From Mytilus californianus (lineage: Eukaryota): a DNA stretch of 64,000 nucleotides. The stretch is taken from positions 4,960,001-5,024,000 of the forward strand of contig NW_026262667.1 of NCBI RefSeq assembly GCF_021869535.1, in the 5' to 3' direction. Positions 28,756 through 43,300 of this stretch are shown piece after piece; the first letter of the stretch is position 1; each line of letters starts with the position of its first letter. A program made the translations under genes and the position numbers. A model generated the notes under the pieces. That model was not told the DNA's origin. It ran no database searches and saw nothing but the letters and a program-made list of their open reading frames with translations.

Positions 28756-29628
28756 GTATCTGACAGACAAAATATAATCTAACTAGAGTAAGACTGGTAC
28801 CCGGCCGTTATTGACAAGCATGCGTATCTGACAGACAAAATATAATCTAACTAGAGTTAGACTGGTACCCGGCCGTTATTGACAAGCATGCGTATCTGAC
28901 AGACAAAATATAATCTAACTAGAGTTAGACTGGTACCCGGCCGTTATTGACAAGCTTGCGTATCTGACAGACAAAATATAATCTAACTAGAGTAAGACTG
29001 GTACCCGGCCGTTATTGACAAGCTTGCGTATCTGACAGACGAAATATAATCTAACTAGAGTTAGACTGGTACCCGGCCGTTATTGACAAGCTTGCGTATC
29101 TGACAGACAAAATATAATCTAACTAGAGTTAGACTGGTACTTGACAAGCTTGCGTATCTGACAGACAAAATATAATCTAACTAGAGTTAGACTGGTACCC
29201 GGCCGTTATTGACAAGCTTGCGTATCTGACAGACACAATATAATCTAACTAGAGTTAGACTGGTACCCGGCCGTTATTGACAAGCTTGCGTATCTGAAAG
29301 ACAAAATATAATCTAACTAGAGTTAGACTGGTACCCGGCCGTTACTGGCAAGCTTGCGTATCTGACAGACACAATATAATCTAACTAGAGTTAGACTGGT
29401 ACCCGGCCGTTACTGGCAAGCTTGCGTATCTGACAGACAAAATATAATCTAACTAAAGTTAGACTGGTACCCGGCCGTTATTGACAAGCTTGCGTATCTG
29501 AAATACAAAATATAATCTAACTAGAGTTAGACTGGTACCCGGCCGTAATGGACAATCTTGCGTATCTGACAGACAAAATATAATCTAACTAGAGTTAGAC
29601 TGGTACCCGGCCGTTATTGACAATCTTG
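28756..29628. repeat. 68-bp minisatellite, 13 copies
   Basis: Unit gtatctgacagacaaaatataatctaactagagttagactggtacccggccgttattgacaagcttgc. The copy at 29096 lacks 10 bp. Confidence 0.95.
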
Positions 29629-29691
29629 ACAATACCTTCTGTTATGGGCTAATTTAGACTGGTACCAGGCCGTTATTGACAAGCCCAAATT

Positions 29692-29988
29692 TAATTTATG
29701 GAACATTTCATCAGACAACAAGTAGACTAGCCGCCACCGTACTTTTTGTGTTTGTATATTTTTTATATGTAAACATATAATCATTTTATTATGTCTTTTA
29801 TATAGATATTTTGTGTTGATAAAGTTTGTGAAATATCCAGGAACACGAAGACAACGAAACAGTTGAAAATCTACTCCAGTTTAGGTTGGTTCCCTCCGTA
29901 AAATATTCAGTATGCCTTCGGAATATACAAATAAAAAGTACGGTGGCGGCTATTCTACTTGTTGTCTAATGAAATGTTCCATAAATTA
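29692..29988. mobile_element. MITE with ~67-bp terminal inverted repeats
   Basis: 29693-29760 is the near-perfect reverse complement of 29922-29987. Confidence 0.75.
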
Positions 29989-32794
29989 GAGTCAAAATAT
30001 GAGCTTCTGCTCATTTCAAAACTGTCCGATCCCGGTGAGTGACGTTATATTAAAGTGTCTTGGGGCAACGAGCCCGGCTGGAAGTCAGGCATGTGCAAGA
30101 AACAGAAAGTGACCCGACAAGAATATTAAAATGTCCGGTCTCGGAAGAAATAGATACTGAGTTATGATACAAACCTTTAACCAATCTCCCTCAAAAAAAA
30201 TAATGTAAACAAGTAAACATAATGATCACCGTCACACTCCCCCTCTCTGAGACCTAATGTGCCCGAACATGAGTCCTCAAGATCGGTAAGGTTTACTTAG
30301 CAAAATACAAATACAAATATGTAGTTATAAACAAATTAATAAGTTGACTATTACTGTCACAAAGTAATAAAATGTTCAAGATCGTCAATTAAATGTTCAA
30401 ATACATCTACAGATATCATCATGGCATCATAGAAGAAAGAAATCCTATTATAAAGTTCAAGCATTCAGAAACACAACTTTAAAAGGTTCCTTAATAAAAT
30501 ATAAATCATATATAGTAAATACATTAAAATATGTGGAAGTATAGTCCTCAAAATCGAACAGGTAGTTAGTTGCACGTTGTTTCGAGATTGTTTTAGTGTT
30601 ATTCAAAAAGGGACGAAAGGGCTCAGTTCTAGATCTTATGTGAAGTGTTGAATTTTTATGGTAATTCAGTATAAAATCAGACTTACCAAAAGTCATAACG
30701 ACAGAGAAGCACAGTCTTGTCATAAAATCTATAACAGTCCTAAATATACACAGCTGTCAAGCACTGAACCACTAGAACAGGTGGGTGCCCCAATATCATG
30801 TAACTCTTTAAGTCACCGAAAACGCAATCCTGTATGTTATTACTATTAACGTATAAAATACACATTTCGATACATGCATCTATACAAACTGATTGTTTGT
30901 TTATCAAATAATTGAAAAAAAATCACAAAGTCATTTAAAACAGTTATATTTTATCATTAAGATTGCAAGCCCTGGATTCCAGTAATTCCCCAATCAATAT
31001 CCTTGACCACGCAGACAACATACCCATGGTGAACCATTTGGGTTGAAAATGCATTCGTAACCAGATTTACTAATAGTCTGTATCTATCCTTGCACATAAG
31101 GTATCCCCAAATATTGCCTGTATTCATCCAAAACTTAGATTTTGAGAGTATTTTCTTCTATTTCGCTACAATCCAGTGAAACTCGTGAAGGACAACTTTA
31201 TTCCGGCTGTATGATATTTTAATTGTCATTTTTTAAATAAATAAAAGAAAACAGGCTACCACTTTCTTAATAAGCATAACTTAACTGATGAATCCGAATT
31301 TTTTTCTCTACGTAACAGTCCCAACTAAACGAAATACATATAATTAAAACCTGTACAGTATGGTAACAAATATATAACGATTCAATCAGACTGAAGAACT
31401 AAATTAAACTTTCGGACATGTGTAGAATGACAATGAGTAATCCCCAATGGCACCTCCATACCAACATTCCTCAGAAGTCATGTGTTTTGACGTCGAAAAT
31501 ATTGACGTCATTTTGTAAAAATGGCGTGATAAATCGCCGACTTCCTGTAATTTACAAAGCCATACTATGCGTTAGATAAGATTACGTTTAATACACGTGT
31601 TAGTTTTTCCCTGTCTGTAAACATTGCGCTTGTCCTCTGGGATGTGAACAAAATGCTCACAATGTGCTCCAAATATTGTACCTTTCCTGTAGGATTTCTA
31701 TTTTCTGTATTAGAAGGTAAGCTGTCTTCTTTTATTTTATTGTAAAAACATTATTCGCGGCAAGATGAGATTAAATTTTGACGTTTGTACTGATCTTTGT
31801 AGGACCAGAAACCGTAGAAATTATGGTAATAAGAACAATGACCTGTTCAATTTTGAAAATCCTATCCAACCATCATGCATATCAGACATATCAGTTTATA
31901 TTCTAATGCAATTAGGCATGTAATGCCAATTTTTATTGGAATGGATGACATCCGCCATCAATTCCACAGTCGATGTTTAAGTTTGAAAATTCAGAGTTTT
32001 GCATTAGAATAGAAATAACAGAATTGTATTTGAAAAGTCTTAATTTTATCAATCAAGTAATTCTTTCCTCAAGTATTGCTCTTTTGTATTTGTTTAATTG
32101 TTTATTATTATAATCTCATGTTGCCCATTAATTTGGAATAACATTGCACATATCTTTTTAACAATATATTTTTGGAATATATATATATATAAAAGATTTA
32201 GTGGCGTAGGAGTCGCCGTATTGGTGCGACACCGGATATTGGTACTCAAGCGATGAGAGATTGAAAACTGCAAGCTGCCGTACATATCAATAATAAGTTG
32301 CTGTACACTATCGAAACTTTGTCTTTGTGAATTACATAGCTTTTTAAAGGCACTTTATGAAAATTATGGTCTTGTGTTTTTTATAGTTGGTCTCAGTAAT
32401 TAAATGATAGGAAGAAATATCCAACTTTTGCGCATGCTCTGACTTGATAAGACGTCTTTTTTTTCTGGGGAAAAAAAATGTAAAGAAAATGGATTTATAA
32501 TTAAACTTTAAACGGAGGATTGAGTATATAAGGATGAAATTAATATTGTGATAGTGACGATGAACTAATATTTGAAGTTTTTTATCCTGATTATGATTTG
32601 ACACTATATGGAATATTGTGTGTGAGCTGTTCTCAACAGATTGTAGGTATTCGTTTAAAACTGTTAACTGTGTAATAATAAACAACAACAAACAATATAA
32701 ACATTCCAAGTTCCTGTTTTGCATACCAGCCTTACACTGTTAATCCACCTTTTTTATTACAAAATTACGACATTCATCCTTAATCACTGACAAA

Positions 32795-33859
32795 ATGCAA
32801 CCCGAAACTCCAGTAAATACAAACAGGCTCCGTCATCACAGCAAGCCTACACCACCTGAACAAGATTCAAGTAAAAAATTCGCAATGTCTTCTCCGGGTT
32901 CCTCACCCGTTCATGTTGACCCTAACGCTATTCATCATGCTTCTGTCCCTGCAGGCCTCAGCTCTCTGCAATACCAACCAACGACTGGAACTACATCTGA
33001 AACTTTACCGCAGCCAATTACATGCACTTTAGCCCAGTCAGATATCCTTCAAATAGCCTTGCAATTAAAAGAGATGATACATTGTGAGATCGACTACACA
33101 ATCAAAGCCACAATAGATCAGTACAAATTTGAAATAGAGAGGCTTAATAAAGAAAACCAATCGCTGCGTGATGGCATGGATGCGTTAGAACAATACAGTC
33201 GACGGGACTTAATTCGTATCAACGGCATTCCTGACGGTGGTATAGATGAATCTTCCATTCAAACAAACGAGTTAGTCAAAGATCTTATCAAAACCATCGA
33301 TGAACAACTAAAACCCGAAGACATCATTCGATCTCATAGAATTGGTAAACCACGCACAAGGGAAGGCAATGAAGACGGCCGAGTTAACAACAAGTTTCAG
33401 CCTCCTAGACAAATAATTGTCAAGATTAAGGATCATAATGTTAAAAAGAGGATCCTCAGATGCAGAAAATTCTTAAAAGGGAAAATAGAATACAAGTACG
33501 TCAGAATGAATGAGGACCTGACCAAGCCGAGAAACGCCATTGCATACAAAGCCAGACAGCTCAGCATTGAGCATCATCTAAGAGACACGTGGACAGTTGA
33601 TGGGAAAATTTATGTAAAGGACAATCAAATGCAAGTCCATGTTGTCAACACAATGCCAGCGTTCCTACGTTTTGTATCGATATACTGCTGTCCTGGTTCC
33701 ATGGACTTCCTTGATAGGCTAGACTACAACAACAAACAAAACAGACGCGAGTACACACCACCACAACTCATAACATATGCGGAAGCACGAGCGAAGGAAT
33801 TAGCAGAGAGAGCATCTTCAAATGCATCAGCTGAAAACACGAGTGTCCAAATTTCATGA
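32795..33859 (+). CDS. LINE ORF1p (coiled coil + RRM + CTD, L1/transposase_22-like)
   Basis: 354 aa. Coiled coil ending LEQYSRRDLIRINGIPD, then DIIRSHRIGK, PRQIIVKI, MNEDLT and WTVDGKIYVK, which are typical motifs of this ORF1 class. Confidence 0.85.
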   Translation: MQPETPVNTNRLRHHSKPTPPEQDSSKKFAMSSPGSSPVHVDPNAIHHASVPAGLSSLQYQPTTGTTSETLPQPITCTLAQSDILQIALQLKEMIHCEIDYTIKATIDQYKFEIERLNKENQSLRDGMDALEQYSRRDLIRINGIPDGGIDESSIQTNELVKDLIKTIDEQLKPEDIIRSHRIGKPRTREGNEDGRVNNKFQPPRQIIVKIKDHNVKKRILRCRKFLKGKIEYKYVRMNEDLTKPRNAIAYKARQLSIEHHLRDTWTVDGKIYVKDNQMQVHVVNTMPAFLRFVSIYCCPGSMDFLDRLDYNNKQNRREYTPPQLITYAEARAKELAERASSNASAENTSVQIS

Positions 33860-34745
33860 TTTAACTTTGAATAAAACTGCATATATTGACAACATTTTTT
33901 TTTTTTTTGTGTACGTATTTCTACATGTATTCAGACTATTTGACAGTCCTGTTTCAGAATTTTTTGCTTTTTTTTGTATTGTTTATTTATTTGTTTATTT
34001 TTCTATAATTACATGCTACACAATTCTTGTACATAATACATCTAATTTGTAATTCATCCAAATTCCTGTTAAATACACGGGAATACTTACCTTGATCGCT
34101 GATTTGTCACGTGACAAATTTTAACGTATTGAAGTTCACAACACAAACTCTCATAGTAAAATAAATTACTCATGCGTGAAAAAGGTAAAACTATAACGGT
34201 TGTTTTTACATGATGTTAAAATCCATGGTAAGGAAATTTTCATGGCTAACTTCAAGCTCCTAAAACAACTTTAAAAAAGAAGATATTACTTTCAATTTGT
34301 AAATTTTATCGTATACAAGCAATCTTTAAACAAAACGTACAGCGATTTGTACTGTTTAAAACGTGTATGCTTACTATAAATGGTAAATTGTATGGACAGA
34401 TCTTGTCAATTCAGCGATCAAATAATCAATCAGGCAATATCAAATCGAGTTGATTTGACACGGCTGGTATTTACAGTTGTACTGAATTACTACGTAGATA
34501 AAGTTGTATCATTTATACATGTGTATACTCATTCCTCCAAACTACTTGTTCAATCCATGTACATGTGCATACTTTTTCTTTTGCTTCATGCATATAACAT
34601 ATTGTTATTCAATTTTTGTTCTCACAATTTTTTCTTACTTTTTACTTACACTTTTTTCACAAAACAAACGAAATGCTATGGATTATTTAACTTTGTATAC
34701 GGCCGCTCTCAGTTTGACCAATTTCAGCCAGATGTAACATAACTC

Positions 34746-37700
34746 ATGGGGGTAGGAATCGAATTATATCGTATGAGAGTTGGCCAATACTCACCAGGCA
34801 AAAACATCAAACAAAGACTAAATTATATTGATTTTATCTGTATCAACTCATTTTTCGCTTGTAAAAGTGTCTCGCAGGCACTGGTGTTATCAATTTTAAT
34901 CTTCACGTTGTCGCATCAACTAGGCGTGTGCCCTAAACCTTCAGAGATGAAACATGTAGACTCAAATGTACAAAAAACAACAAGTGTAAATGTGAATCTT
35001 AGACTATTTATTATTTCATTTTTACTATTTGTTATACAAATTTTGCTAATCCTAGCAGGAATAGAGGTAAATCCAGGTCCAAGTGACGATATCGATTCTT
35101 CTCAAAGTTCAATTAACTCAACTGACATGTCGGATTTCAGTGAACTTTTCTCAAAATCAGTCTCAATTCTTCACTTAAATGTACAAAGCCTAGCCCCGAA
35201 AATAGATCTGATTCAAGCTGAATATTCTGATTTCGACATTTTAGCGTTTAGTGAAACCTGGTTAAACAATAATCATACAGACGAATCAATTGAAATCCTA
35301 AATTACCAGCACCCCTTCCGTCGTGACAGAGGTCAACACAAGGTTGGAGGGGGGATAATTGTTTATGTAAAAAATGATATACATGTTCAACGTCGAAGTG
35401 ACCTCGAAAGCGAAAGTTTGGAAGCAATATGGTTAGAACTTAAATTTAAAGATAAAAAGGCTTTGCTCGGAACCTTTTATATACCTCCTAATAGTGGATC
35501 AGATATCTGGGAAAAAATTGAATATTCTCTTGATATGGCGTCTAATGATAATACTATTAATTATATAATGGCCACTGGTGATTTTAACGATAACCAACTA
35601 GCCCCTGTTAATTCAAAAATTACACCTTTGTTAAGCCAATTTAGTCTTACTCAAATGATAGACGAACCTACTCATTTTACTGAATCGTCGTCATCATTGT
35701 TAGACCTTTTTATAACAAACGATGCTCACATAATAACATACTGTGGAGTCGGACCACCTTTATTAGACCAAATACGTTTTCACTGTCCTATCATTAGTCT
35801 TTTGAACTTTCCAAAATGTCGTCAAAAAACTTTTAAGCGAAAAATTTGGCTATATGATCGAGGAGATTATGACAGATATCGTAACATTTTATCTGAAAAA
35901 AATTGGGATTCCGTAATAAACTTAAATAACGTTGAACAATTTACAACCGAAATAACAAAAACTATCATAGAAGCTGCTGAAAAATGTATTCCAAATAAAA
36001 TAATAATTGTTCGTAAAAATGAACCTCCATGGCTAACAAATGATGTTAAAAAAATGATAAGGAAAAAAAATAGAATCCACAGAAAGGCTAAAAAATATAA
36101 TAACCAATCGGATCGGTCAAAATTTAAGAAAATACGAAATGAAGTTACCAGTTTAATAAGAAAATCAAAGGATGATTATAACAACAATTTAATTAAAAAA
36201 ATCATGAACAGTAACCCGTCCACTACTAATTGGTGGAAAACGGTCAAACAAATATCCGGATTAAAAACAAACGACGCAAGTATACCTCCATTAATGGTTA
36301 ATAACAACTTAATATTTGATGAAATCGAAAAGGCAAATGAATTTAATCGATTTTTTTCTTCCCAGTCAAATATTGATGATTCAAGTGCTATGTTACCTGA
36401 AGAACTTCATACTATTAGTGATGACATTAGTTATATAGAACTTACGGTTACTGAAGTTGAAGATATATTGAAAATTGTTAATCCCACAAAAGCTTCTGGC
36501 CCAGACCTCATAAGTCCCAAATTGTTAAAAGAAGCATCTTCTGTTTTGAAGTATCCACTATGTAAGCTATTTAACTTATCGTTAAGTACGTCTACTTTTC
36601 CAGATCAATGGAAAAGAGCAAATGTCACCCCAGTTTATAAAAATAGTAAACCGAATGACGTTAAAAACTATAGACCTATTTCCTTGTTGAGTGTAATTTC
36701 AAAGTGTATGGAACGTTGTGTATATAAACATGTTTACAATCACTTTAAGCGTAATAATATTTTAACGAAAAATCAGTCAGGCTTTACACGGGGGGATTCA
36801 GCGGTTAATCAATTAATTAACATTTCAAATGATTTTGGGAAGGCTTTAGATAGCGGTAAAGAAATAAGGGTAGTATTCTGTGATATAAGTAAAGCGTTTG
36901 ATCGAGTCTGGCATAAGGGACTGCTATTTAAACTTCAACAAGCGGGCATATCGGGTTCTTTACTAAGGTGGTTTGAAAATTATCTTACAAATAGAGTCCA
37001 GCGGGTGGTTATTAACGGTTCAAGTTCCGAATGGTTACCTGTAAATGCAGGCGTCCCACAAGGGTCCATTCTGGGCCCTCTCCTTTTTTTGATATTTATA
37101 AACGATATAATAGAAGACATTCAAGCTCAAATTAAGCTATTCGCAGATGACACTTCATTGTATATTATGGTTGACAATCCAACAGAAACAGCTACAATTT
37201 TAAATAACGATCTAGATAAGATTTATAATTGGTCAAAAAAATGGCTTGTGAATTTTAATGCCCAAAAAACTGAAAGTATGATAATTTCAAAAAAAATAAA
37301 TAGACCCTTTCATCCTCCATTAAATATGAATACCCAAGAGCTACAAACAGTAAGTAAACACAAACATCTAGGTGTCTTTTTTTCTAACAACGGATCCTGG
37401 AACGACCATATTGAATACATAGTTTCTAAATCGTATAAAAGAATAAATATAATGAGAAAAATGAAAAATGTTCTTGATAGGTTTACACTTGAAAAAATTT
37501 ACATATCATTTGTTCGCCCAATTCTTGAATATGCCGATGTCGTTTGGGACTCTCAAAATCAGAATTTGATTGCTAAACTTGAAAATATTCAGCTTGACGC
37601 AGCGCGTATCGTCACGGGGGGTACTAAACTTACCAGTATAAACAATTTATATGTTGAAACTCGATGGGAAAAATTATCTGAAAGACGACGCAATCATAGA

Positions 37701-38300
37701 TTAATTCATTATCACAAAATTTTGAATAATAAAACCCCAGAGTATTTAAGAGACTTATTGCCCGATTCAGTAGGAAGTAGGCATGATCATAATACAAGAC
37801 AAAGAAATAATATTACACAAGTCAATACTCGGACCCGTTTATATTCTGAATATTTCATCCCAGCAACAACAAAACTATGGAACACTCTTAACTTAAACAT
37901 AAGAAAATGTGAATCTCTATCATTATTCAAAAAACAAATTAGTACCCAAAATTGTAAGGTCCCAGCGTATTATTATATAGGACATCGTTTTGGTCAAATT
38001 CTTCATGCTCGCTTAAGAATGGATTCAAGTTCATTGAATTCTCACCTATTCGTTCGTAATTTGGTAGACTCTCCAAATTGTCGTTGTGGTGATGTAGAAA
38101 CAAATTCTCACTTCCTGTTATCTTGTCCCATATACACTGATTTAAGACATGAACTATTAGATTCTGTTTCAGTTCTTCCTGTCCAAGTTAACACAAAAAC
38201 TTTGCTTTTTGGATCAACGGTACTCTCGGATGAGCAAAATAGTCTTTTATTTAGTTTGGTGCAGAAATATATTATTAAAAGTAAACGTTTTAACCCTTGA
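34746..38300 (+). CDS. LINE ORF2p: leader + 2A-like motif + APE endonuclease + reverse transcriptase + C-terminal Cys/His domain
   Basis: 1184 aa with no stops. APE motifs HLNVQSL, FSETWL, GGGIIVYVK, GDFN, LLDLFIT. RT motifs YRPISLLS, FCDISKAFDRVW, GVPQGSILGPLLFLIFIND, FADDT. C-terminal CRCGDVETNSHFLLSC. Confidence 0.95.
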   Translation: MGVGIELYRMRVGQYSPGKNIKQRLNYIDFICINSFFACKSVSQALVLSILIFTLSHQLGVCPKPSEMKHVDSNVQKTTSVNVNLRLFIISFLLFVIQILLILAGIEVNPGPSDDIDSSQSSINSTDMSDFSELFSKSVSILHLNVQSLAPKIDLIQAEYSDFDILAFSETWLNNNHTDESIEILNYQHPFRRDRGQHKVGGGIIVYVKNDIHVQRRSDLESESLEAIWLELKFKDKKALLGTFYIPPNSGSDIWEKIEYSLDMASNDNTINYIMATGDFNDNQLAPVNSKITPLLSQFSLTQMIDEPTHFTESSSSLLDLFITNDAHIITYCGVGPPLLDQIRFHCPIISLLNFPKCRQKTFKRKIWLYDRGDYDRYRNILSEKNWDSVINLNNVEQFTTEITKTIIEAAEKCIPNKIIIVRKNEPPWLTNDVKKMIRKKNRIHRKAKKYNNQSDRSKFKKIRNEVTSLIRKSKDDYNNNLIKKIMNSNPSTTNWWKTVKQISGLKTNDASIPPLMVNNNLIFDEIEKANEFNRFFSSQSNIDDSSAMLPEELHTISDDISYIELTVTEVEDILKIVNPTKASGPDLISPKLLKEASSVLKYPLCKLFNLSLSTSTFPDQWKRANVTPVYKNSKPNDVKNYRPISLLSVISKCMERCVYKHVYNHFKRNNILTKNQSGFTRGDSAVNQLINISNDFGKALDSGKEIRVVFCDISKAFDRVWHKGLLFKLQQAGISGSLLRWFENYLTNRVQRVVINGSSSEWLPVNAGVPQGSILGPLLFLIFINDIIEDIQAQIKLFADDTSLYIMVDNPTETATILNNDLDKIYNWSKKWLVNFNAQKTESMIISKKINRPFHPPLNMNTQELQTVSKHKHLGVFFSNNGSWNDHIEYIVSKSYKRINIMRKMKNVLDRFTLEKIYISFVRPILEYADVVWDSQNQNLIAKLENIQLDAARIVTGGTKLTSINNLYVETRWEKLSERRRNHRLIHYHKILNNKTPEYLRDLLPDSVGSRHDHNTRQRNNITQVNTRTRLYSEYFIPATTKLWNTLNLNIRKCESLSLFKKQISTQNCKVPAYYYIGHRFGQILHARLRMDSSSLNSHLFVRNLVDSPNCRCGDVETNSHFLLSCPIYTDLRHELLDSVSVLPVQVNTKTLLFGSTVLSDEQNSLLFSLVQKYIIKSKRFNP

Positions 38301-39857
38301 TGTTAATGCTTCATCATTCAATAGAAACCCAAGCATTTCACACCGTATAGATTACAATAATTCATGTTTATAATTTTTTTTTTTTTTTTTTTTTTTCTTT
38401 TCTCATTAATTATTTTTTTTTCTTCTTCTTCTTCTTCTTCTTCTTTCACCTTTTTTCATATTGATATATTTATTACAGAGCATGCCAGTATTTATATTTA
38501 TGTATTGTCCAATAAGTGTATTATTTTTTGTAAAAGGAGACAGATTTGTAAAAGCAAATTGCTTGTTTCTGAATCCTTAATATTATTTCATTTGTATAAT
38601 ATCGTTTAATGTTGATTTATCTGAATAAATATTGTTTAAACCAAGCATTAAACCGGCTACTTTTCTTGATCATAAGTTATCGGTGCCACGTTTATCCGGT
38701 TCTCTATGGTAGTTTTCTATCTCCAGATTTATTTACGTTGATGTCTAACATTCCTAAATGATTTGAAGAACAGAATTGCCAGCATATTATTATTCAATCG
38801 TTAGACACGTGCAAATATTACAAATGCATAAATAGTTGGAATTCTTACCTGTGATTGCAAAATTTAATAACCTCTCTCCGCTTCAGCTAGCACCAATATC
38901 CGATGTCGCTCCCATACGGTGGGAGTGGACTGAAATGAGCAATTGAAAAAAAAACTTTTCTGATACGAGTTAATTAGTGTGTACTTTCGTTTTCTTTTTT
39001 TTATGTTCAAAAGTTTTGTTTTGCAAAATATTGCTCGTCCGGCTCCTACGCCAGTGTACACTCAAATTCTTTGTTTGTGATTTGTCCTATAGTATCACTC
39101 GATTCTAATGTAACAGGAGTCGAGTTTCCACTGTTTCGTTTTAGTCTATATAGAAATAAGGAGATGTGGTATGATTGCCAATGAAATCAATATCTACCAG
39201 TACTTAGTTGCTCAAAACAGTTGACCAATGGATAAGACTTGTCCACTGGATAAGTTACACTGATTTCAACATGCTTTATTCACTGGTCAACAGTTCAGTG
39301 GATAAAAGTTTCTAGCAGCCCAGTCCAGGGTTCAAATAACGTGAATGTAAGCTTTTATAAGTCACCGTATGGTACGGCCTTCAACAATGAGAAGAAAAAA
39401 AACATGCACTATAGTCATATATAAAAGGGCCTGAAACAATTCAAACGAAAATACTAATGGCCTTATTAAATTTTACGAAAAACAAATATCACAGACATGA
39501 GCCTATTTGTCAACATTTTACACCTCGATGTCATTCGTTGTAAAGAATGAATATATACTAAGATATTTACAAATATAATGCTTGCTCGTGTTAAAATGGG
39601 CATCATAGAGCATGACATGAAATTATTTCTTAAATAGAACAGATCGACAACCGCTGGGCAACAGGTATATATATCACACAAAATATTTATTTTATATTAT
39701 GCACTAAGAGGGATAACTCTAAAAAAAATTATCTTGTCGTTTCCCCCAAATTAGAACGATTCCAAATTTCATATTTGGAAATACAGAGGTCTACAAAAAG
39801 TTTATAAATATATTAAAACTAACTAAAACATTTTAAACAACAACCCCGATTCTATTT

Positions 39858-40050
39858 TATATAAAGAGAGTAACAACTGTTAGGAAGGATACTAATCTCC
39901 ACTGAGGCCTTCAGAATAACACTATTCTATTTTTCAGTGCCGTTGAATATATTATTTGTATTTAGAGAAATTGGTTAAAATTAAGTATCATTGATAGTTC
40001 CTTAAGTATGTCTCCAGAGACCAGTCGGGTTAATTCGGTGGTGCAAACAG
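39858..40050 (+). promoter_or_regulatory. Possible TATA box and non-coding first exon of the lipase gene
   Basis: TATATAAA at 39858-39865 and a donor CAG|GTAATT after 40050. The first coding exon has its own acceptor (ttacag ending 40386) 12 nt before the ATG, so an upstream UTR exon is implied. Confidence 0.35.
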
Positions 40051-40398
40051 GTAATTTTTTGATACCTTTTGTGCTAGAGAATGACACTAGTACGGGTAAA
40101 TTAATGTAATGAGAGCTGGTTCTCCCTTGTTGTCATCCCGACGTCTGCCAAGCTGCCTGGATATTGTACAAACCGCGTCAATATAAGTAAAATGTTTATA
40201 TAGATAACACGACTGGAACTTAGATTTCGTCCTTGTAATACATGAGCCAAGTGAGCCTCAACTTTACATTCCTATGCAGTTTGTCATTCATTTGTCATTA
40301 TCAGTACGGATTCTATATATTTGCCTTGCTGACAATTTAGGACTCTCTTATCTCTAATATTTGATATTCATCTTGTGAACTTACAGGACGGAGAGAAC

Positions 40399-43300
40399 AT
40401 GAACAATTTTCATTCCCTTTTGATAATTGGTGAGCACATATTATGATTATTTTTTGCTTTTATGAATATATATTTTATAAAAGTCCTTTTTGTAGGTATT
40501 TTAGAAGTTATGATTTTTGATTAACGTACTTAAAAAGGTAGCAATAATTTCTCATTCATGCAGCAGTATTGTAATTGTAAAATGAAAACTCTTCTAACAC
40601 CAAATATCGCAATTGTTTTTAAGTTCGTTTTCTTTGGGGTTTCTTTGCGTTTTTTTAATTGTTTTCTTCGTTTTCATGTTTTAAATTTCTTGTGATAGCT
40701 TACAGTTTTTCGAGGCTACAATTTAATACAATACAATACAATACAATACAATATTTTTATTTTTCCAAATTAAAGGGCCCATTAAGAGCATAACATTAAT
40801 AACAGCATGACATAAACATTACAGAGTGATTAAAGAAACATAAAATAATAGTTCAAATGCATGAGGAAAGGGTCAGTGGTCAAGGGGAGATAATTTTGCT
40901 ATCTATTTAACTAATTTTCTGATTTTCTAAGTTGCAGGCCTTTATCAAGGTATGAACATAAAATAGATAAAAAACTGCTATCTTCATTACTCATGATCCA
41001 TGTAAAAAGATCATTTCTGTTTAAATTAACTAAACTGGGGTATTTTTTTATATAATCAGTCATATCTCTTCTGAGGTTATTGTAAAGAGGACATTCCAGA
41101 AGAAAGTGCATTTCATTTTCAATAGAATTTGAATTACAATTTAATAGACTGTTAGTGCATCGTGTAAGGGTATGGTAAATACAGATTATCATCAAATAAC
41201 ACGGCAGTTGCGTTTCAGTAAAATACGCGCCAATATTTGATCATACATTGTATTTTCAAAATTCTCAACTGACGATAGCTATATTTGAAACCATTTTTTT
41301 TCTAAATGTTGTTCAGCTGAATGCAGTGGTAGAACATTAGCTATATATTTAAGATTATCATTTTCTGAGACATTGCTATTCAGTAAAACTTGGGTTGTGT
41401 TCTTTTTTCAGTGATTAGTCTTACTACAGTATTAGAAGCTACCAAAAAAACGACACAGAGTCATGGACCAAGTACAGTAACGGTCACCACACCAAGGATT
41501 AACGAAAACAAAACGAAATGCTATCCTTTTGTTGGCTGTTTTGACAACTTTCCACCATTCGATAATGCAAAACTAAATCTTCCTAAGTCACCACAAGAAG
41601 TTGGAACTCAAATGCAGATATTTACCAATAGTAACCCACAGAATGGTTACTTCTTAAATTTCACAGACTTGGGTACTATAACCAAATCTCCATTTAAACC
41701 CGGCCTTAAGATTAAGTTTATCATTCATGGATTTAGTAATACCATTAAGACACCGTGGATATATCAAATGAAAGACGAACTTTTGAAAATGGTAGGTGCA
41801 GAATTAGTAGTATTAAAAATCATTACAAGTGGAAATCATAAAACATTTGGGTACGCCGTTTCAAAACGTAAGATTAAAATGATTTGTTAAAAAAAAAATA
41901 CTATCACTATTTCAATACATGTTAGTCATTGAGTACAATGTCGCAGAGTGTTTATCATGGTATGATTAGTGACAGTCATTAGTGTTAAAATTGAATATAA
42001 AAATCTTTAATATCAATGCAGCTGATATATTCAGATATTCTTAAAATGTGAAAATCGCAATAATTACAAGATAGTAGCAAGATATCAAAGGGATATTCAA
42101 ACTCCTAAATCGAAGGCAAACTGACAATGCCATGGCAAAAAAATTAAATCGACAAAAAGACTAACAACAGTTTACTAAACACAACAGAAAACTAAAGATT
42201 AAGCAACATCAATCCCACCAAAAAAACGGGGGTGATCTTAGGTGCTCCGGAAGGGTAAGCAGATTATGCACCACATTTAACACCCATCGTGTTCTGCTCA
42301 TTTAAGTACACATTTTGTGATAAGTCTAGTTACGACAATTGGAACATATCCCATCATCATCTGTGAAACAGATATTCCATTATGGTCCACCAACTCGTGA
42401 TAGCGTCCGTAAAATTATTAAAGGGATGACTTCACCTTTTATCACTTAGAATCATTGGTTTAATATCTCCCTTGTAAGCAGAAACCCTCTATCTAGTAAA
42501 TAAAGATAGAAAACGCAAGTTCTGAAATACTGTATTAATTGTGAATTATATACTCCATATGCAGTCGCTGCTGGAATAGAAATGCAGAAAGTATAGAAAA
42601 TTGGGAGCTGAAATCATCTCCTTCGTCGTAAAGTTTTGTTCTTAACCAACCCTTATTGTCAATCATCATCTTTATAGAGGAACGTGAAGTAAAAAGATAA
42701 TGCTAGTTTCTTTTCATTCTTTAAAAGAAGCTCCTGTATGAAGTTTGTCCCATGTGTATAAGAAACAATTAAGCAAAGAGCACAGTTGGTTTTCATAGGA
42801 ATGTCGATTGTTTGTTGAAAAAACACCTCCTCGAAATATAACAAATATGTTATCAACCAAGACATCAAGCATCTTGACATTGTCGGTTTCGGAGAATTTT
42901 TTGTTTGAATCAGGATGATTTTATTTTACGAAGTAAGATTTATCCAACCCTTAACAAGGTGTTTGTATCTACGTTGATCAGTCTTTTTTATGAAACAAAG
43001 TTGGACCAATTCTTTCAATCTCTCTTTAAGTTTTGCATTGGAAATACCTGTGTAAAGGGTAGAAAAGTCAAATGTTTCTATACTATTGCAAGTTAAATAG
43101 ACTAAGATTGTATGTACTCTAACAGATCTTTGGAATTATTCAGTTTCTGATTCACACCGCCCCTAGAGTATGTACTGCAGCCCGGCTTTGATTGCCCATA
43201 AAATTTATTTTAATAGTTTGTAAGGATACTTATCTAACTTAGATATCCAACAGAGTGAAGGAAATTCTAGTTCTTCGTCTATGATTAGATTACAAAGGAA

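What the first reader, a model, noticed from the sequence alone, without database searches (positions are those of the whole stretch)
34746..35081. LINE ORF2 begins with a hydrophobic leader and a non-canonical 2A-like (StopGo) motif
Seen: 112 aa precede the endonuclease, with two hydrophobic stretches (VSQALVLSILIFTLSHQL; LRLFIISFLLFVIQILLILAG) ending in G-I-E-V-N-P-G-P (35058-35081). Known: D(V/I)ExNPG|P causes ribosome skipping, 2A-like sequences occur N-terminal to APE in invertebrate CR1/L2-group LINEs (Odon et al.), and some 2As double as signal sequences. Here the invariant Asp is Gly. Inference: either a variant StopGo, or a non-skipping form that leaves ORF2p attached to a membrane or ER-targeting leader. 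Either would be an unusual control of retrotransposition in an apparently intact element.
Basis: partly seen in the sequence, partly recalled or inferred. Interest (0 to 1): 0.7.

Follow-up and report, generated by a model that had tools for sequence, protein, structure and literature searches.

The report
G-type StopGo leader on mussel LINE ORF2
The mussel LINE's second gene does start with a hydrophobic leader ending in GIEVNPGP, but a glycine at that position is a known, working form of the 2A/StopGo ribosome-skipping signal and is common in related LINEs, so this is an ordinary new member of a known kind.

Summary
ORF2 (34746-38300, 1184 aa, APE plus RT) opens with 112 aa that hold two hydrophobic stretches and end in G-I-E-V-N-P-G-P (35058-35081).

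- **Not a private mutation.** About 20 copies of this family in the genome carry the same GGA codon. The closest relatives, in Mytilus coruscus and in unnamed assemblies, are also G-type.
- **Not non-canonical by current knowledge.** Li et al. 2026 expanded the core to (D/G/C/N)(V/I)ExNPGP, with G as frequent as D in RNA viruses. They describe a Leu-rich upstream motif ending "(A/G/S)G at p12", which is what is seen here. Two 2026 preprints list GxExNPGP as a functional core, including in retroelements.
- **Common in this genome.** It has 179 such cores (0 in the reversed control), 56 of them G-type from about ten further LINE families.
- **Strongly conserved.** NPGP is invariant across 15 diverged leaders. 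The core (71% identity) is better conserved than the APE start (58%).

Most likely it is a working or partly working StopGo that releases a ~111-aa leader and lowers ORF2p output.

A possibly undescribed extra is a conserved N-terminal motif, M-x6-YRxR(I/V)G, which fixes Met1 as the start. Membrane targeting remains untested.

The parts
32429..38644 (+). LINE (APE-type non-LTR retrotransposon) copy, at least this extent. All copies compared share the 3' end at 38644. Other copies are 5'-truncated at 32806 and at 33117-33149.
   Evidence: megablast of window 29000-41000 against five other copies at 99.1-99.9% identity. AATAAA at 38624-38629.
32795..33859 (+). ORF1, 354 aa, with a coiled-coil-like region followed by ...YSRRDLIRINGIPD. 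No Pfam hit.
   Evidence: shared substitutions among copies fall 102/82/193 by codon position, a coding pattern.
33860..34745 (+). 886-nt ORF1-ORF2 spacer. It includes a 120-codon ORF (34380-34742) in the ORF2 frame, closed by TAA at 34740-34742. Probably non-coding.
   Evidence: 3-12 indels per diverged copy in 34380-34739, mostly frame-shifting.
34746..38300 (+). ORF2, 1184 aa: leader, StopGo, linker, APE, RT and a C-terminal Cys/His motif.
   Evidence: four of six copies at >=99% identity keep the full 1184-aa ORF starting at the same Met.
34767..34790 (+). Conserved N-terminal leader motif YRMRVGQY (residues 8-15). General form M-x6-[YHF]-R-x-R-[IV]-G-x-[FY].
   Evidence: 17 predicted proteins carry it at residue 7-9 from their Met; the Arg codons vary between CGN and AGR, so conservation is at the protein level.
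34848..34934 (+). First hydrophobic stretch (residues 35-63), predicted helical, weakly conserved.
   Evidence: KD peak 1.78. AF2 helices 27-38 and 42-58, pLDDT about 82; 15% mean identity, above KD 1.6 in 7 of 15 relatives.
34986..35057 (+). Second hydrophobic, Leu/Ile-rich helix (residues 81-104). This is the upstream part of the StopGo element and ends ...ILLILA before Gly105.
   Evidence: KD peak 2.93. AF2 helix 81-103; above KD 1.6 in 15 of 15 relatives. G-type relatives have A/G/S at p11 and I/L/V at p10.
35058..35081 (+). StopGo core octapeptide G105-I-E-V-N-P-G111 | P112. The predicted skipped bond lies between codons 35076-35078 (Gly) and 35079-35081 (Pro).
   Evidence: conserved in family copies. 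N109, P110, G111 and P112 are invariant in 15 diverged relatives; core 71% mean identity.
35082..35156 (+). Ser/Asp-rich linker (residues 113-137), predicted disordered, between the core and APE.
   Evidence: pLDDT below 50 for residues 114-137. Ser-rich in all relatives.
35175..35762 (+). Apurinic/apyrimidinic-type endonuclease domain (residues 144-339).
   Evidence: PF03372, E = 2.3e-08.
36648..37298 (+). Reverse transcriptase domain (residues 635-851).
   Evidence: PF00078, E = 1.3e-34.

Best explanation
The 112-aa N-terminus of ORF2 is a genuine, selected leader of a recently active mussel (Mytilus) LINE family. It ends in a G-type StopGo/2A element.

**Proposed mechanism**
1. Translation starts at Met1 (34746).
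2. [quoted passage not shown]
3. There they prevent formation of the Gly-Pro bond, so the ~111-aa leader is released.
4. On some ribosomes translation resumes, giving ORF2p that begins at Pro112: a Ser/Asp linker, then APE, then RT.
5. The Leu-rich upstream helix has 4 Leu at positions -19 to -10. Such elements in eukaryotes also lower the amount of product, so the net effect is probably to uncouple ORF2p from the leader and to throttle its output.

**Shown here:** the sequence, its family-wide and cross-species conservation, its fit to the published expanded motif, and its position before APE.

**Inferred:** that skipping occurs, and how efficiently.
For: 1. **Fit to the published motif.** The core matches (D/G/C/N)(V/I)ExNPGP. 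The upstream ...ILLILA-G fits the Leu-rich 'motif 5 ends in (A/G/S)G at p12' of Li et al. 2026. It also fits the 'non-canonical -7GxExNPGP+1' core of Snell & Matreyek 2026.
2. **Not a private mutation.** GGA is present in the aligned copies at 87-100% identity. Twenty of the 56 G-type hits in the genome are this family.
3. **Recent activity.** Six dispersed copies are >=99% identical. Four of them keep the full 1184-aa ORF2.
4. **Selection on the core.** NPGP is invariant in 15 relatives of 26-54% identity. Mean identity is 71% for the core, against 58% for the APE start and 10-30% for the rest of the leader.
5. **Same tolerated substitutions as in viruses.** Among 97 NPGP-bearing relatives, p12 is D 69, G 20, N 4, and C, S, T and E once each. 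p13 is only I or V. p14 is E 58 and H 32. G, C, N and T at p12 and H at p14 are among the functional variants found independently in viruses.
6. **Register pattern as in viruses.** D-type relatives have G at p11 in 44 of 61. G-type relatives have A, G or S at p11 in 16 of 19. This reproduces the virus pattern.
7. **Predicted structure.** The AF2 helix ends at residue 103, which is position -9. The reported helix cut-off in active peptides is near -10.
8. **Experimental precedent for natural G-type cores.** DHAV-1 2A1 works. A class X3.1 peptide with G at this position was 97% active.
9. **Same architecture elsewhere in this genome.** Other G-type cores here are followed by APE, with or without a PHD finger. 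Odon et al. describe this layout.
Against: - No experiment bears on this exact peptide.
- Li et al. assayed motifs 1, 3, 4 and 6 but not the Leu-rich G-type motif 5.
- Substitutions of D12 are inactive in the F2A and P2A contexts, so activity depends on context.
- Only 7.4% of retroelement-associated 2A peptides were highly active in human cells.
- Several LINE 2A-like sequences in Odon et al. were weak or inactive.
- p15 is Val here, whereas G-type virus motifs prefer Pro.
- Within-family codon-position counts are uninformative for the leader: 7/8/8 for residues 1-67 and 3/2/0 for residues 68-112.
- RNA reads over the leader are very sparse.
Confidence: 0.7

Rival explanations
1. Mainly a stall or 'reduction' element. 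The Leu-rich helix with the G-type core stalls ribosomes, and most events end in loss of product (fall-off or quality-control degradation) rather than a clean stop-and-go. Its main role would be to hold ORF2p at very low levels, with only a minor skipped fraction.
For: Snell & Matreyek report that three or more Leu at -19 to -10 lowers protein abundance, and that 59% of the ORF2p-associated 2A-like peptides they tested fall in the reduction class. This peptide has 4 Leu in that stretch. Odon et al. and Luke et al. also proposed down-regulation of ORF2p as the role of LINE 2As.
Against: This overlaps with the best explanation rather than excluding it. The reduction phenotype was measured in human cells with 20-mers, not in molluscs. 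This element already has an ORF1 and an 886-nt spacer, which should limit ORF2 translation by themselves.
Confidence: 0.15
2. Non-skipping membrane tether or targeting leader. The Gly-Pro bond forms normally, and ORF2p stays fused to a two-helix hydrophobic leader that anchors it to the ER or another membrane.
For: There are two predicted hydrophobic helices, with KD peaks of 1.78 and 2.93. Net charge is +4 in residues 1-40, ahead of the first helix. 2A-like sequences that double as signal sequences exist in sea urchin NLR proteins.
Against: A pure tether gives no reason for NPGP to be invariant, or for the core to be the best conserved segment. The first hydrophobic stretch is poorly conserved. 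Short-leader relatives have only the one helix that belongs to the 2A itself. A nuclear-acting endonuclease/RT permanently anchored in a membrane is hard to reconcile with recent transposition. No SignalP or TMHMM-type tool was available.
Confidence: 0.08
3. Inactive relic. The motif descends from a D-type 2A that lost activity through D-to-G, and persists only because the copies are young.
For: D12 substitutions abolish activity in F2A and P2A. Many LINE 2A-like sequences are inactive in vitro.
Against: G-type cores persist in several clades of the APE tree, with relatives down to about 35-45% identity. The nearest relatives in other assemblies are G-type with NPGP intact. Family copies that have decayed elsewhere do lose the motif, which shows what neutral decay looks like.
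Confidence: 0.05

Closest known systems
2A-like sequences at the N-terminus of ORF2 in APE-type non-LTR retrotransposons (Odon et al. 2013, PMC3708506; for example CR1-1_CGi of the oyster and CR1-1_LG of the limpet, both active)
   Same: The position is just upstream of APE in ORF2. There is a Leu-rich upstream tract. The host is a mollusc. Other families in the same genome have a PHD finger between the 2A and APE.
   Different: Odon et al. searched only with GD(V/I)ExNPGP, so G-type cores were outside their survey. They place the 2A 40-80 aa from the N-terminus, whereas here it ends at residue 112. Most of their elements lack ORF1, but this one has a 354-aa ORF1.
G-type StopGo cores of RNA viruses: expanded motif (D/G/C/N)(V/I)ExNPGP and Leu-rich 'motif 5' (Li et al. 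2026, PMC12846837)
   Same: G at p12, I at p13, E at p14 and NPGP. The upstream Leu-rich stretch ends in A-G with the G at p12. The p11 preference is the same as in viruses.
   Different: This is a cellular retroelement, not a virus. p15 is Val rather than the preferred Pro. Motif 5 itself was not assayed in that paper.
'Non-canonical' -7GxExNPGP+1 eukaryotic 2A-like peptides and the leucine stall-helix (Snell & Matreyek 2026, bioRxiv 10.64898/2026.06.17.732966); Class X 2A-like peptides in reverse-transcribing elements (Baral et al. 2026, bioRxiv 10.64898/2026.09.24.754024)
   Same: The same core type, a Leu-rich alpha-helix ending near -10, and association with LINE ORF2p upstream of APE.
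   Different: I could not check whether this exact peptide or this Mytilus family is in their libraries. They did not discuss the long leader upstream of the 20-26-mer.
DHAV-1 2A1 (GxExNPGP; PMC6249498) and class B 2A peptides (Rao et al. 2025, PMC12338488)
   Same: G at the Asp position with skipping retained. G-I/V-E precedes the N/H-PGP.
   Different: Those have a ...TTE-G or W...EEG upstream context with an invariant Trp and usually Pro at p15. Here there is no Trp and the upstream is Leu/Ile-rich, like class A.
2A-like signal sequences of sea urchin NLR proteins (Roulston et al. 2016, PMC4981915)
   Same: A hydrophobic N-terminal sequence ending in a StopGo core. This allows dual fates, skipped or fused and targeted.
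   Different: Those are 26-aa sequences at the extreme N-terminus, predicted as signal peptides. Here the hydrophobic helix starts at residue ~81 and is preceded by a conserved motif and another helix. No signal-peptide prediction could be run.

Membership tests
StopGo/2A translational recoding element | Core octapeptide matching (D/G/C/N)(V/I)ExNPGP | tested here: met
   GIEVNPGP at 35058-35081. Motif definition from PMC12846837.
StopGo/2A translational recoding element | A suitable upstream context: a helical, hydrophobic or Leu-rich tract. For G-type cores it ends in (A/G/S)G at p12. | tested here: met
   ...FLLFVIQILLILA-G. AF2 helix 81-103. p11 is A/G/S in 16 of 19 G-type relatives. Definition.
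StopGo/2A translational recoding element | In frame inside a longer ORF, with selective maintenance of the core among relatives | tested here: met
   N109, P110, G111 and P112 are invariant in 15 relatives. Core identity is 71% against 10-30% for the rest of the leader. The core is conserved in family copies.
StopGo/2A translational recoding element | Two separate translation products from one ORF, with no Gly-Pro bond formed | not testable with these tools
   This needs a translation assay or proteomics. RNA reads say nothing about it.
Class B 2A peptides (Rao et al. 2025) | An invariant Trp about 15 residues upstream, an EEG(I/V)E centre, and usually Pro before N/H-PGP | tested here: not met
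   There is no Trp anywhere in residues 1-112, p15 is Val, and the upstream is Leu/Ile-rich. Definition. Only the G-I-E centre is shared.
LINE ORF2 N-terminal 2A-like sequences (Odon et al. 2013) | Located in the N-terminal region of ORF2p, upstream of the APE domain of an APE plus RT protein | tested here: met
   APE at 144-339 and RT at 635-851. The core is at 105-112.
LINE ORF2 N-terminal 2A-like sequences (Odon et al. 2013) | Signature GD(V/I)ExNPGP as used in their search | tested here: not met
   Asp is absent (AGIEVNPGP). This fails the 2013 search string but not the current motif definition.
APE-type non-LTR retrotransposon (LINE) | APE and RT in one ORF, multiple dispersed copies with a common 3' end and variable 5' truncation | tested here: met
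   all copies end at 38644, with 5' ends at 32429, 32806 and 33117-33149.
APE-type non-LTR retrotransposon (LINE) | Clade assignment (CR1, L2, Rex1 and so on) by RT phylogeny against reference elements | not tested
No Repbase or RTclass1 reference set was available.
2A-like signal sequence / membrane-targeting leader | A hydrophobic segment able to act as a signal or anchor, and membrane localisation of the unskipped product | tested here: inconclusive
   KD peaks are 1.78 and 2.93. The second segment passes 1.6 in 15 of 15 relatives and the first in 7 of 15. No signal-peptide or TM predictor was available, and no localisation data exist.

The most novel reading that the evidence does not exclude
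The leader may be more than a 2A with padding. It could be a conserved third product of this LINE group.

It is a ~55-150-aa peptide with a fixed N-terminal motif, M-x6-[YHF]R-x-R-[IV]G-x-[FY]. In this subclade it also has two hydrophobic helices. StopGo would release it with the second helix only 7 residues from its new C-terminus, a tail-anchor-like layout. The released peptide could insert into a membrane or act on the ribosome or RNP, giving the element a function separate from ORF1p and ORF2p.

The motif is conserved at the protein level across D-, G- and N-type families. I found no paper that contains the four motif strings searched.
Probability: 0.15. Interest if true: 0.6.

Novelty: new member of a known kind. 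Interest (0 to 1): 0.3.

Why it matters
The finding adds a recently active, intact Mytilus LINE family to the known set of retroelements that place a StopGo signal in front of their endonuclease.

It also shows, within one genome and its nearest relatives, three things about LINE cores:
- The Gly-for-Asp core is common: 56 of 179 cores in the genome and 20 of 97 relatives.
- It has been gained or lost repeatedly, needing at least 7-8 changes on the APE tree.
- It obeys the same register rule as in RNA viruses.

This is independent evolutionary support for the recently expanded motif. It is not a new mechanism.

The useful lead is the conserved leader upstream of the 2A, with its N-terminal YRxR(I/V)G motif and variable extra helix. 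Published screens of 20-26-mers do not address it. It could explain why LINEs keep a separate upstream product.

Tried and rejected
1. **Private D-to-G mutation.** Rejected. GGA is conserved across family copies and related families and species.
2. **Real start at the second in-frame ATG (34946, Met68).** A Mytilus coruscus gene model (P0005) starts there, and an old 73% copy (L030) has lost Met1. Rejected. Met68 is absent in sister families, 17 predicted proteins share the N-terminal motif at a fixed distance from Met1, and indels are rare from 34746 onward but frequent upstream.
3. **The in-frame 120-codon ORF (34380-34742) as part of ORF2 by read-through of TAA.** Rejected. It is indel-rich among copies and has no family hit.
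4. **Codon-position and synonymous-change test within the family.** It works for ORF1 and APE. There are too few shared substitutions in the leader to decide.
5. **Apparent divergent ORF1 in L002-L004.** An artefact. Those copies are 5'-truncated near 33117-33149.
6. **ESM Atlas feature search with the leader.** Best score 0.88 to unnamed clusters, which is uninformative.
7. **AlphaFold2 of leader plus APE start with 15 sequences.** Mean pLDDT 63.9 and pTM 0.29. Only the secondary structure is usable, so no fold search was run.
8. **RNA reads from four runs.** Very sparse, mostly 95-99% alike, with no joints. They give no evidence for splicing of the spacer and no measure of expression.
9. **The first hydrophobic stretch plus ...QLGVCPKPS as a decayed older 2A copy.** The resemblance is not conserved in relatives. 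Not pursued.
10. **Literature search for four motif strings (YRARIG, YRMRIG, YRARVG, YRMRVG).** No paper found.

Copies were only compared.
Full report
**What is there.**
The window carries an apparently intact LINE of at least 6.2 kb (32429-38644, + strand).
- ORF1 is 32795-33859 (354 aa). An 886-nt spacer follows.
- ORF2 is 34746-38300 (1184 aa).
- Pfam finds the endonuclease at residues 144-339 and the reverse transcriptase at 635-851 of ORF2.
- Five other copies at 99.1-99.9% identity share the 3' end at 38644. All but one are 5'-truncated at different points, which is the usual LINE signature.
- Four of the six young copies keep the complete 1184-aa ORF2 from the same Met, so the family moved recently.
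- The nearest database proteins are from Mytilus coruscus. The genome is therefore a mussel's.

**The observation.**
- The two hydrophobic stretches are real. Kyte-Doolittle 19-residue means peak at 1.78 (residues 37-55) and 2.93 (residues 88-106).
- The degenerate DNA pattern for [D/E/G][V/I/M]ExNPGP occurs once in the window against 0.00 expected. It occurs 179 times in the genome against 0 for the reversed control.

**Is the Gly a private mutation?**
No.
- In an alignment of 21 copies of 87-100% identity, nearly all keep GGA ATA GAG GTA AAT CCA GGT CCA. Changes occur only in older copies, most of which also carry frameshifts in flanking regions.
- Twenty of the genome's 56 G-type cores are this family. 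The other 36 come from about ten other sequence families: GIET, GIEP, GIEQ, GIER, GIEK, GVEL and GVEQ before NPGP.
- Most of the 14 G-type sites whose flanks I read sit behind a Leu-rich run and in front of an APE start or a PHD finger plus APE.
- A search of 1.84 billion representative proteins with leader plus APE returned 150 close relatives, 97 of which carry xxxxNPGP before APE.
  - p12 is D 69, G 20, N 4, and C, S, T and E once each.
  - p13 is only I or V.
  - p14 is E 58 and H 32.
- The relatives closest to this element (P0002, P0004, P0005, P0006, P0010, P0028, P0055, P0079) are G-type; the closest of all, P0001, has Ser at p12.
- On a tree of 82 APE domains, the D/G state needs at least 7-8 changes. 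G-type clades persist.

**Is Gly non-canonical?**
Not by the current literature.
- Li et al. 2026 (PMC12846837) found p12 = G in 1,207 clustered virus ORFs against 908 exact D(V/I)ExNPGP matches, and expanded the core to (D/G/C/N)(V/I)ExNPGP.
- They describe Leu-rich upstream motifs in which "motif 5 ends in (A/G/S)G at p12". Here the sequence is ...ILLILA-G-IEVNPGP.
- Their register rule is G at p11 for D-type but not for G-type. The LINE relatives reproduce it: D-type has G at p11 in 44 of 61, and G-type has A, G or S at p11 in 16 of 19.
- Snell & Matreyek 2026 name -7GxExNPGP+1 as the second functional core. They show that a Leu-rich helix at -19 to -10 drives both skipping and lower protein abundance, with 59% of the ORF2p-linked peptides they tested in the reduction class.
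- Baral et al. 2026 report 237 single-substitution 'class X' peptides in reverse-transcribing elements. One natural peptide with G at the Asp position was 97% active. Asp substitutions are dead in the F2A and P2A contexts.
- DHAV-1 2A1 (GxExNPGP) skips.
- The GIE centre recalls class B of Rao et al. 2025. However, the defining Trp and the Pro at p15 are absent, so this is not class B.

**Evidence that the motif is under selection as StopGo.**
- In 15 diverged leaders (26-54% identical to this one), N109, P110, G111 and P112 are invariant.
- Mean identity by segment:

| Segment | Mean identity |
|---|---|
| Core octapeptide | 71% |
| APE start | 58% |
| Second hydrophobic helix | 30% |
| Linker | 29% |
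| N-terminal region | 23% |
| First hydrophobic stretch | 15% |
| Loop | 10% |

- A tether or a relic would not keep NPGP invariant.
- The substitutions tolerated in LINEs include G, C, N and T at p12 and H at p14, all found functional in viruses.

**The leader itself.**
- Met1 is the real start. Sister families in the genome and 17 predicted proteins from several assemblies share M-x6-[YHF]R-x-R-[IV]G-x-[FY], with the Tyr/His at residue 7-9.
- The Arg codons differ (CGT, CGC, AGA, AGG), so the conservation is at the protein level.
- Indels among copies are frequent upstream of 34746 and rare after it.
- Short-leader relatives go from this motif to a single Leu-rich helix and the core, with NPGP ending at residue 53-69. 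This element belongs to a long-leader group (107-153 residues) with an extra, poorly conserved hydrophobic segment and a variable loop.
- AlphaFold2 with this alignment gives helices 5-14, 27-38, 42-58 and 81-103, then a coil from 104 through the Ser/Asp linker. Confidence is modest, with a mean pLDDT of 63.9.
- I found no paper that contains any of the four motif strings searched.

**How it most likely works.**
- When Gly111 is in the P site, roughly the last 30-40 residues lie in the exit tunnel (established knowledge of tunnel length). That is the whole second helix plus the core.
- So this helix is part of the recoding element. It cannot act as a co-translational signal for the skipped ORF2p.
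- The first hydrophobic stretch (residues 35-63) would already be outside the ribosome.
- Skipping would release a ~111-aa leader and let ORF2p continue from Pro112.
- With 4 Leu at -19 to -10, some loss of product is likely.
- I put 0.70 on a working or partly working StopGo, 0.15 on a mainly throttling stall element, 0.08 on a non-skipping membrane tether, and 0.05 on an inactive relic.
- None of these can be separated without a translation assay. Motif 5 itself was not assayed by Li et al..

**Differences from Odon et al. 2013.**
- Their search string required GD, so G-type cores were not seen.
- Their 2As lie 40-80 aa from the N-terminus.
- Most of their elements lack ORF1, and Luke et al. 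argued that a 2A replaces ORF1 as a brake on ORF2. This element has both.

**Other checks.**
- RNA reads from four runs are sparse and show no joints.
- An earlier first-reader note of this scan (s1-288064) records another 2A at a LINE ORF2 start elsewhere in this genome. This agrees with the genome-wide count.

**Verdict.**
This is a new member of a known kind: a LINE ORF2 N-terminal StopGo with a G-type core. The conserved upstream leader motif is the only part that may be undescribed.

Noticed in passing
window 34767-34790, and P0002, P0006, P0010, P0028, P0038, P0046, P0050, P0055, P0060, P0102, P0119, P0124, P0142, P0146, P0147: A conserved N-terminal leader motif, M-x6-[YHF]R-x-R-[IV]G-x-[FY], always 7-9 residues from the Met. 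It is shared by D-, G- and N-type LINE families and conserved at the protein level. No paper contains any of the four motif strings searched.
   Followed up: partly
P0016, P0025-P0027, P0029, P0030, P0039 and others: D(I/V)H-x-NPGP, with His instead of Glu at p14, is very common in these LINE relatives (32 of 97). In RNA viruses it is reported as a rare functional variant.
   Followed up: no
G000:C35:24.77-25.35 Mb (L030 and five similar hits): Six copies of an old (~73% identical) relative lie roughly 75-130 kb apart on one contig, all on the minus strand. In L030 the 2A core and linker are deleted and Met1 is lost. This looks like one old insertion carried along in a segmental or tandem duplication.
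   Followed up: partly
L034, L037, L039, L040 (G000:C2:40953224, C13:20096482, C57:16540147, C79:2140443): Another G-type LINE group (LLLLS-GIE[TP]NPGP) has a PHD finger between the StopGo core and APE (Pfam PF00628 plus PF03372). Its leader is short and basic, not hydrophobic.
   Followed up: partly
window 34946-35081: Among family copies, the 45 codons before the skip site show no shared third-position substitution (3/2/0 by codon position). The APE rate would predict about 6. This could be small numbers or an extra constraint at the RNA level.
   Followed up: no
window 34380-34742: A 120-codon ORF lies in the ORF2 frame, separated from Met1 by a conserved TAA and one codon. It is indel-rich among copies and has no family hit, so it is probably spacer.
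   Followed up: yes
window 38364-38450: The 3' UTR of the LINE holds a poly-T run followed by a (TTC)n microsatellite. RNA reads appear cut there, and many 3'-end reads are 95-99% alike with loose ends, so they probably come from related copies or chimeric transcripts.
   Followed up: no
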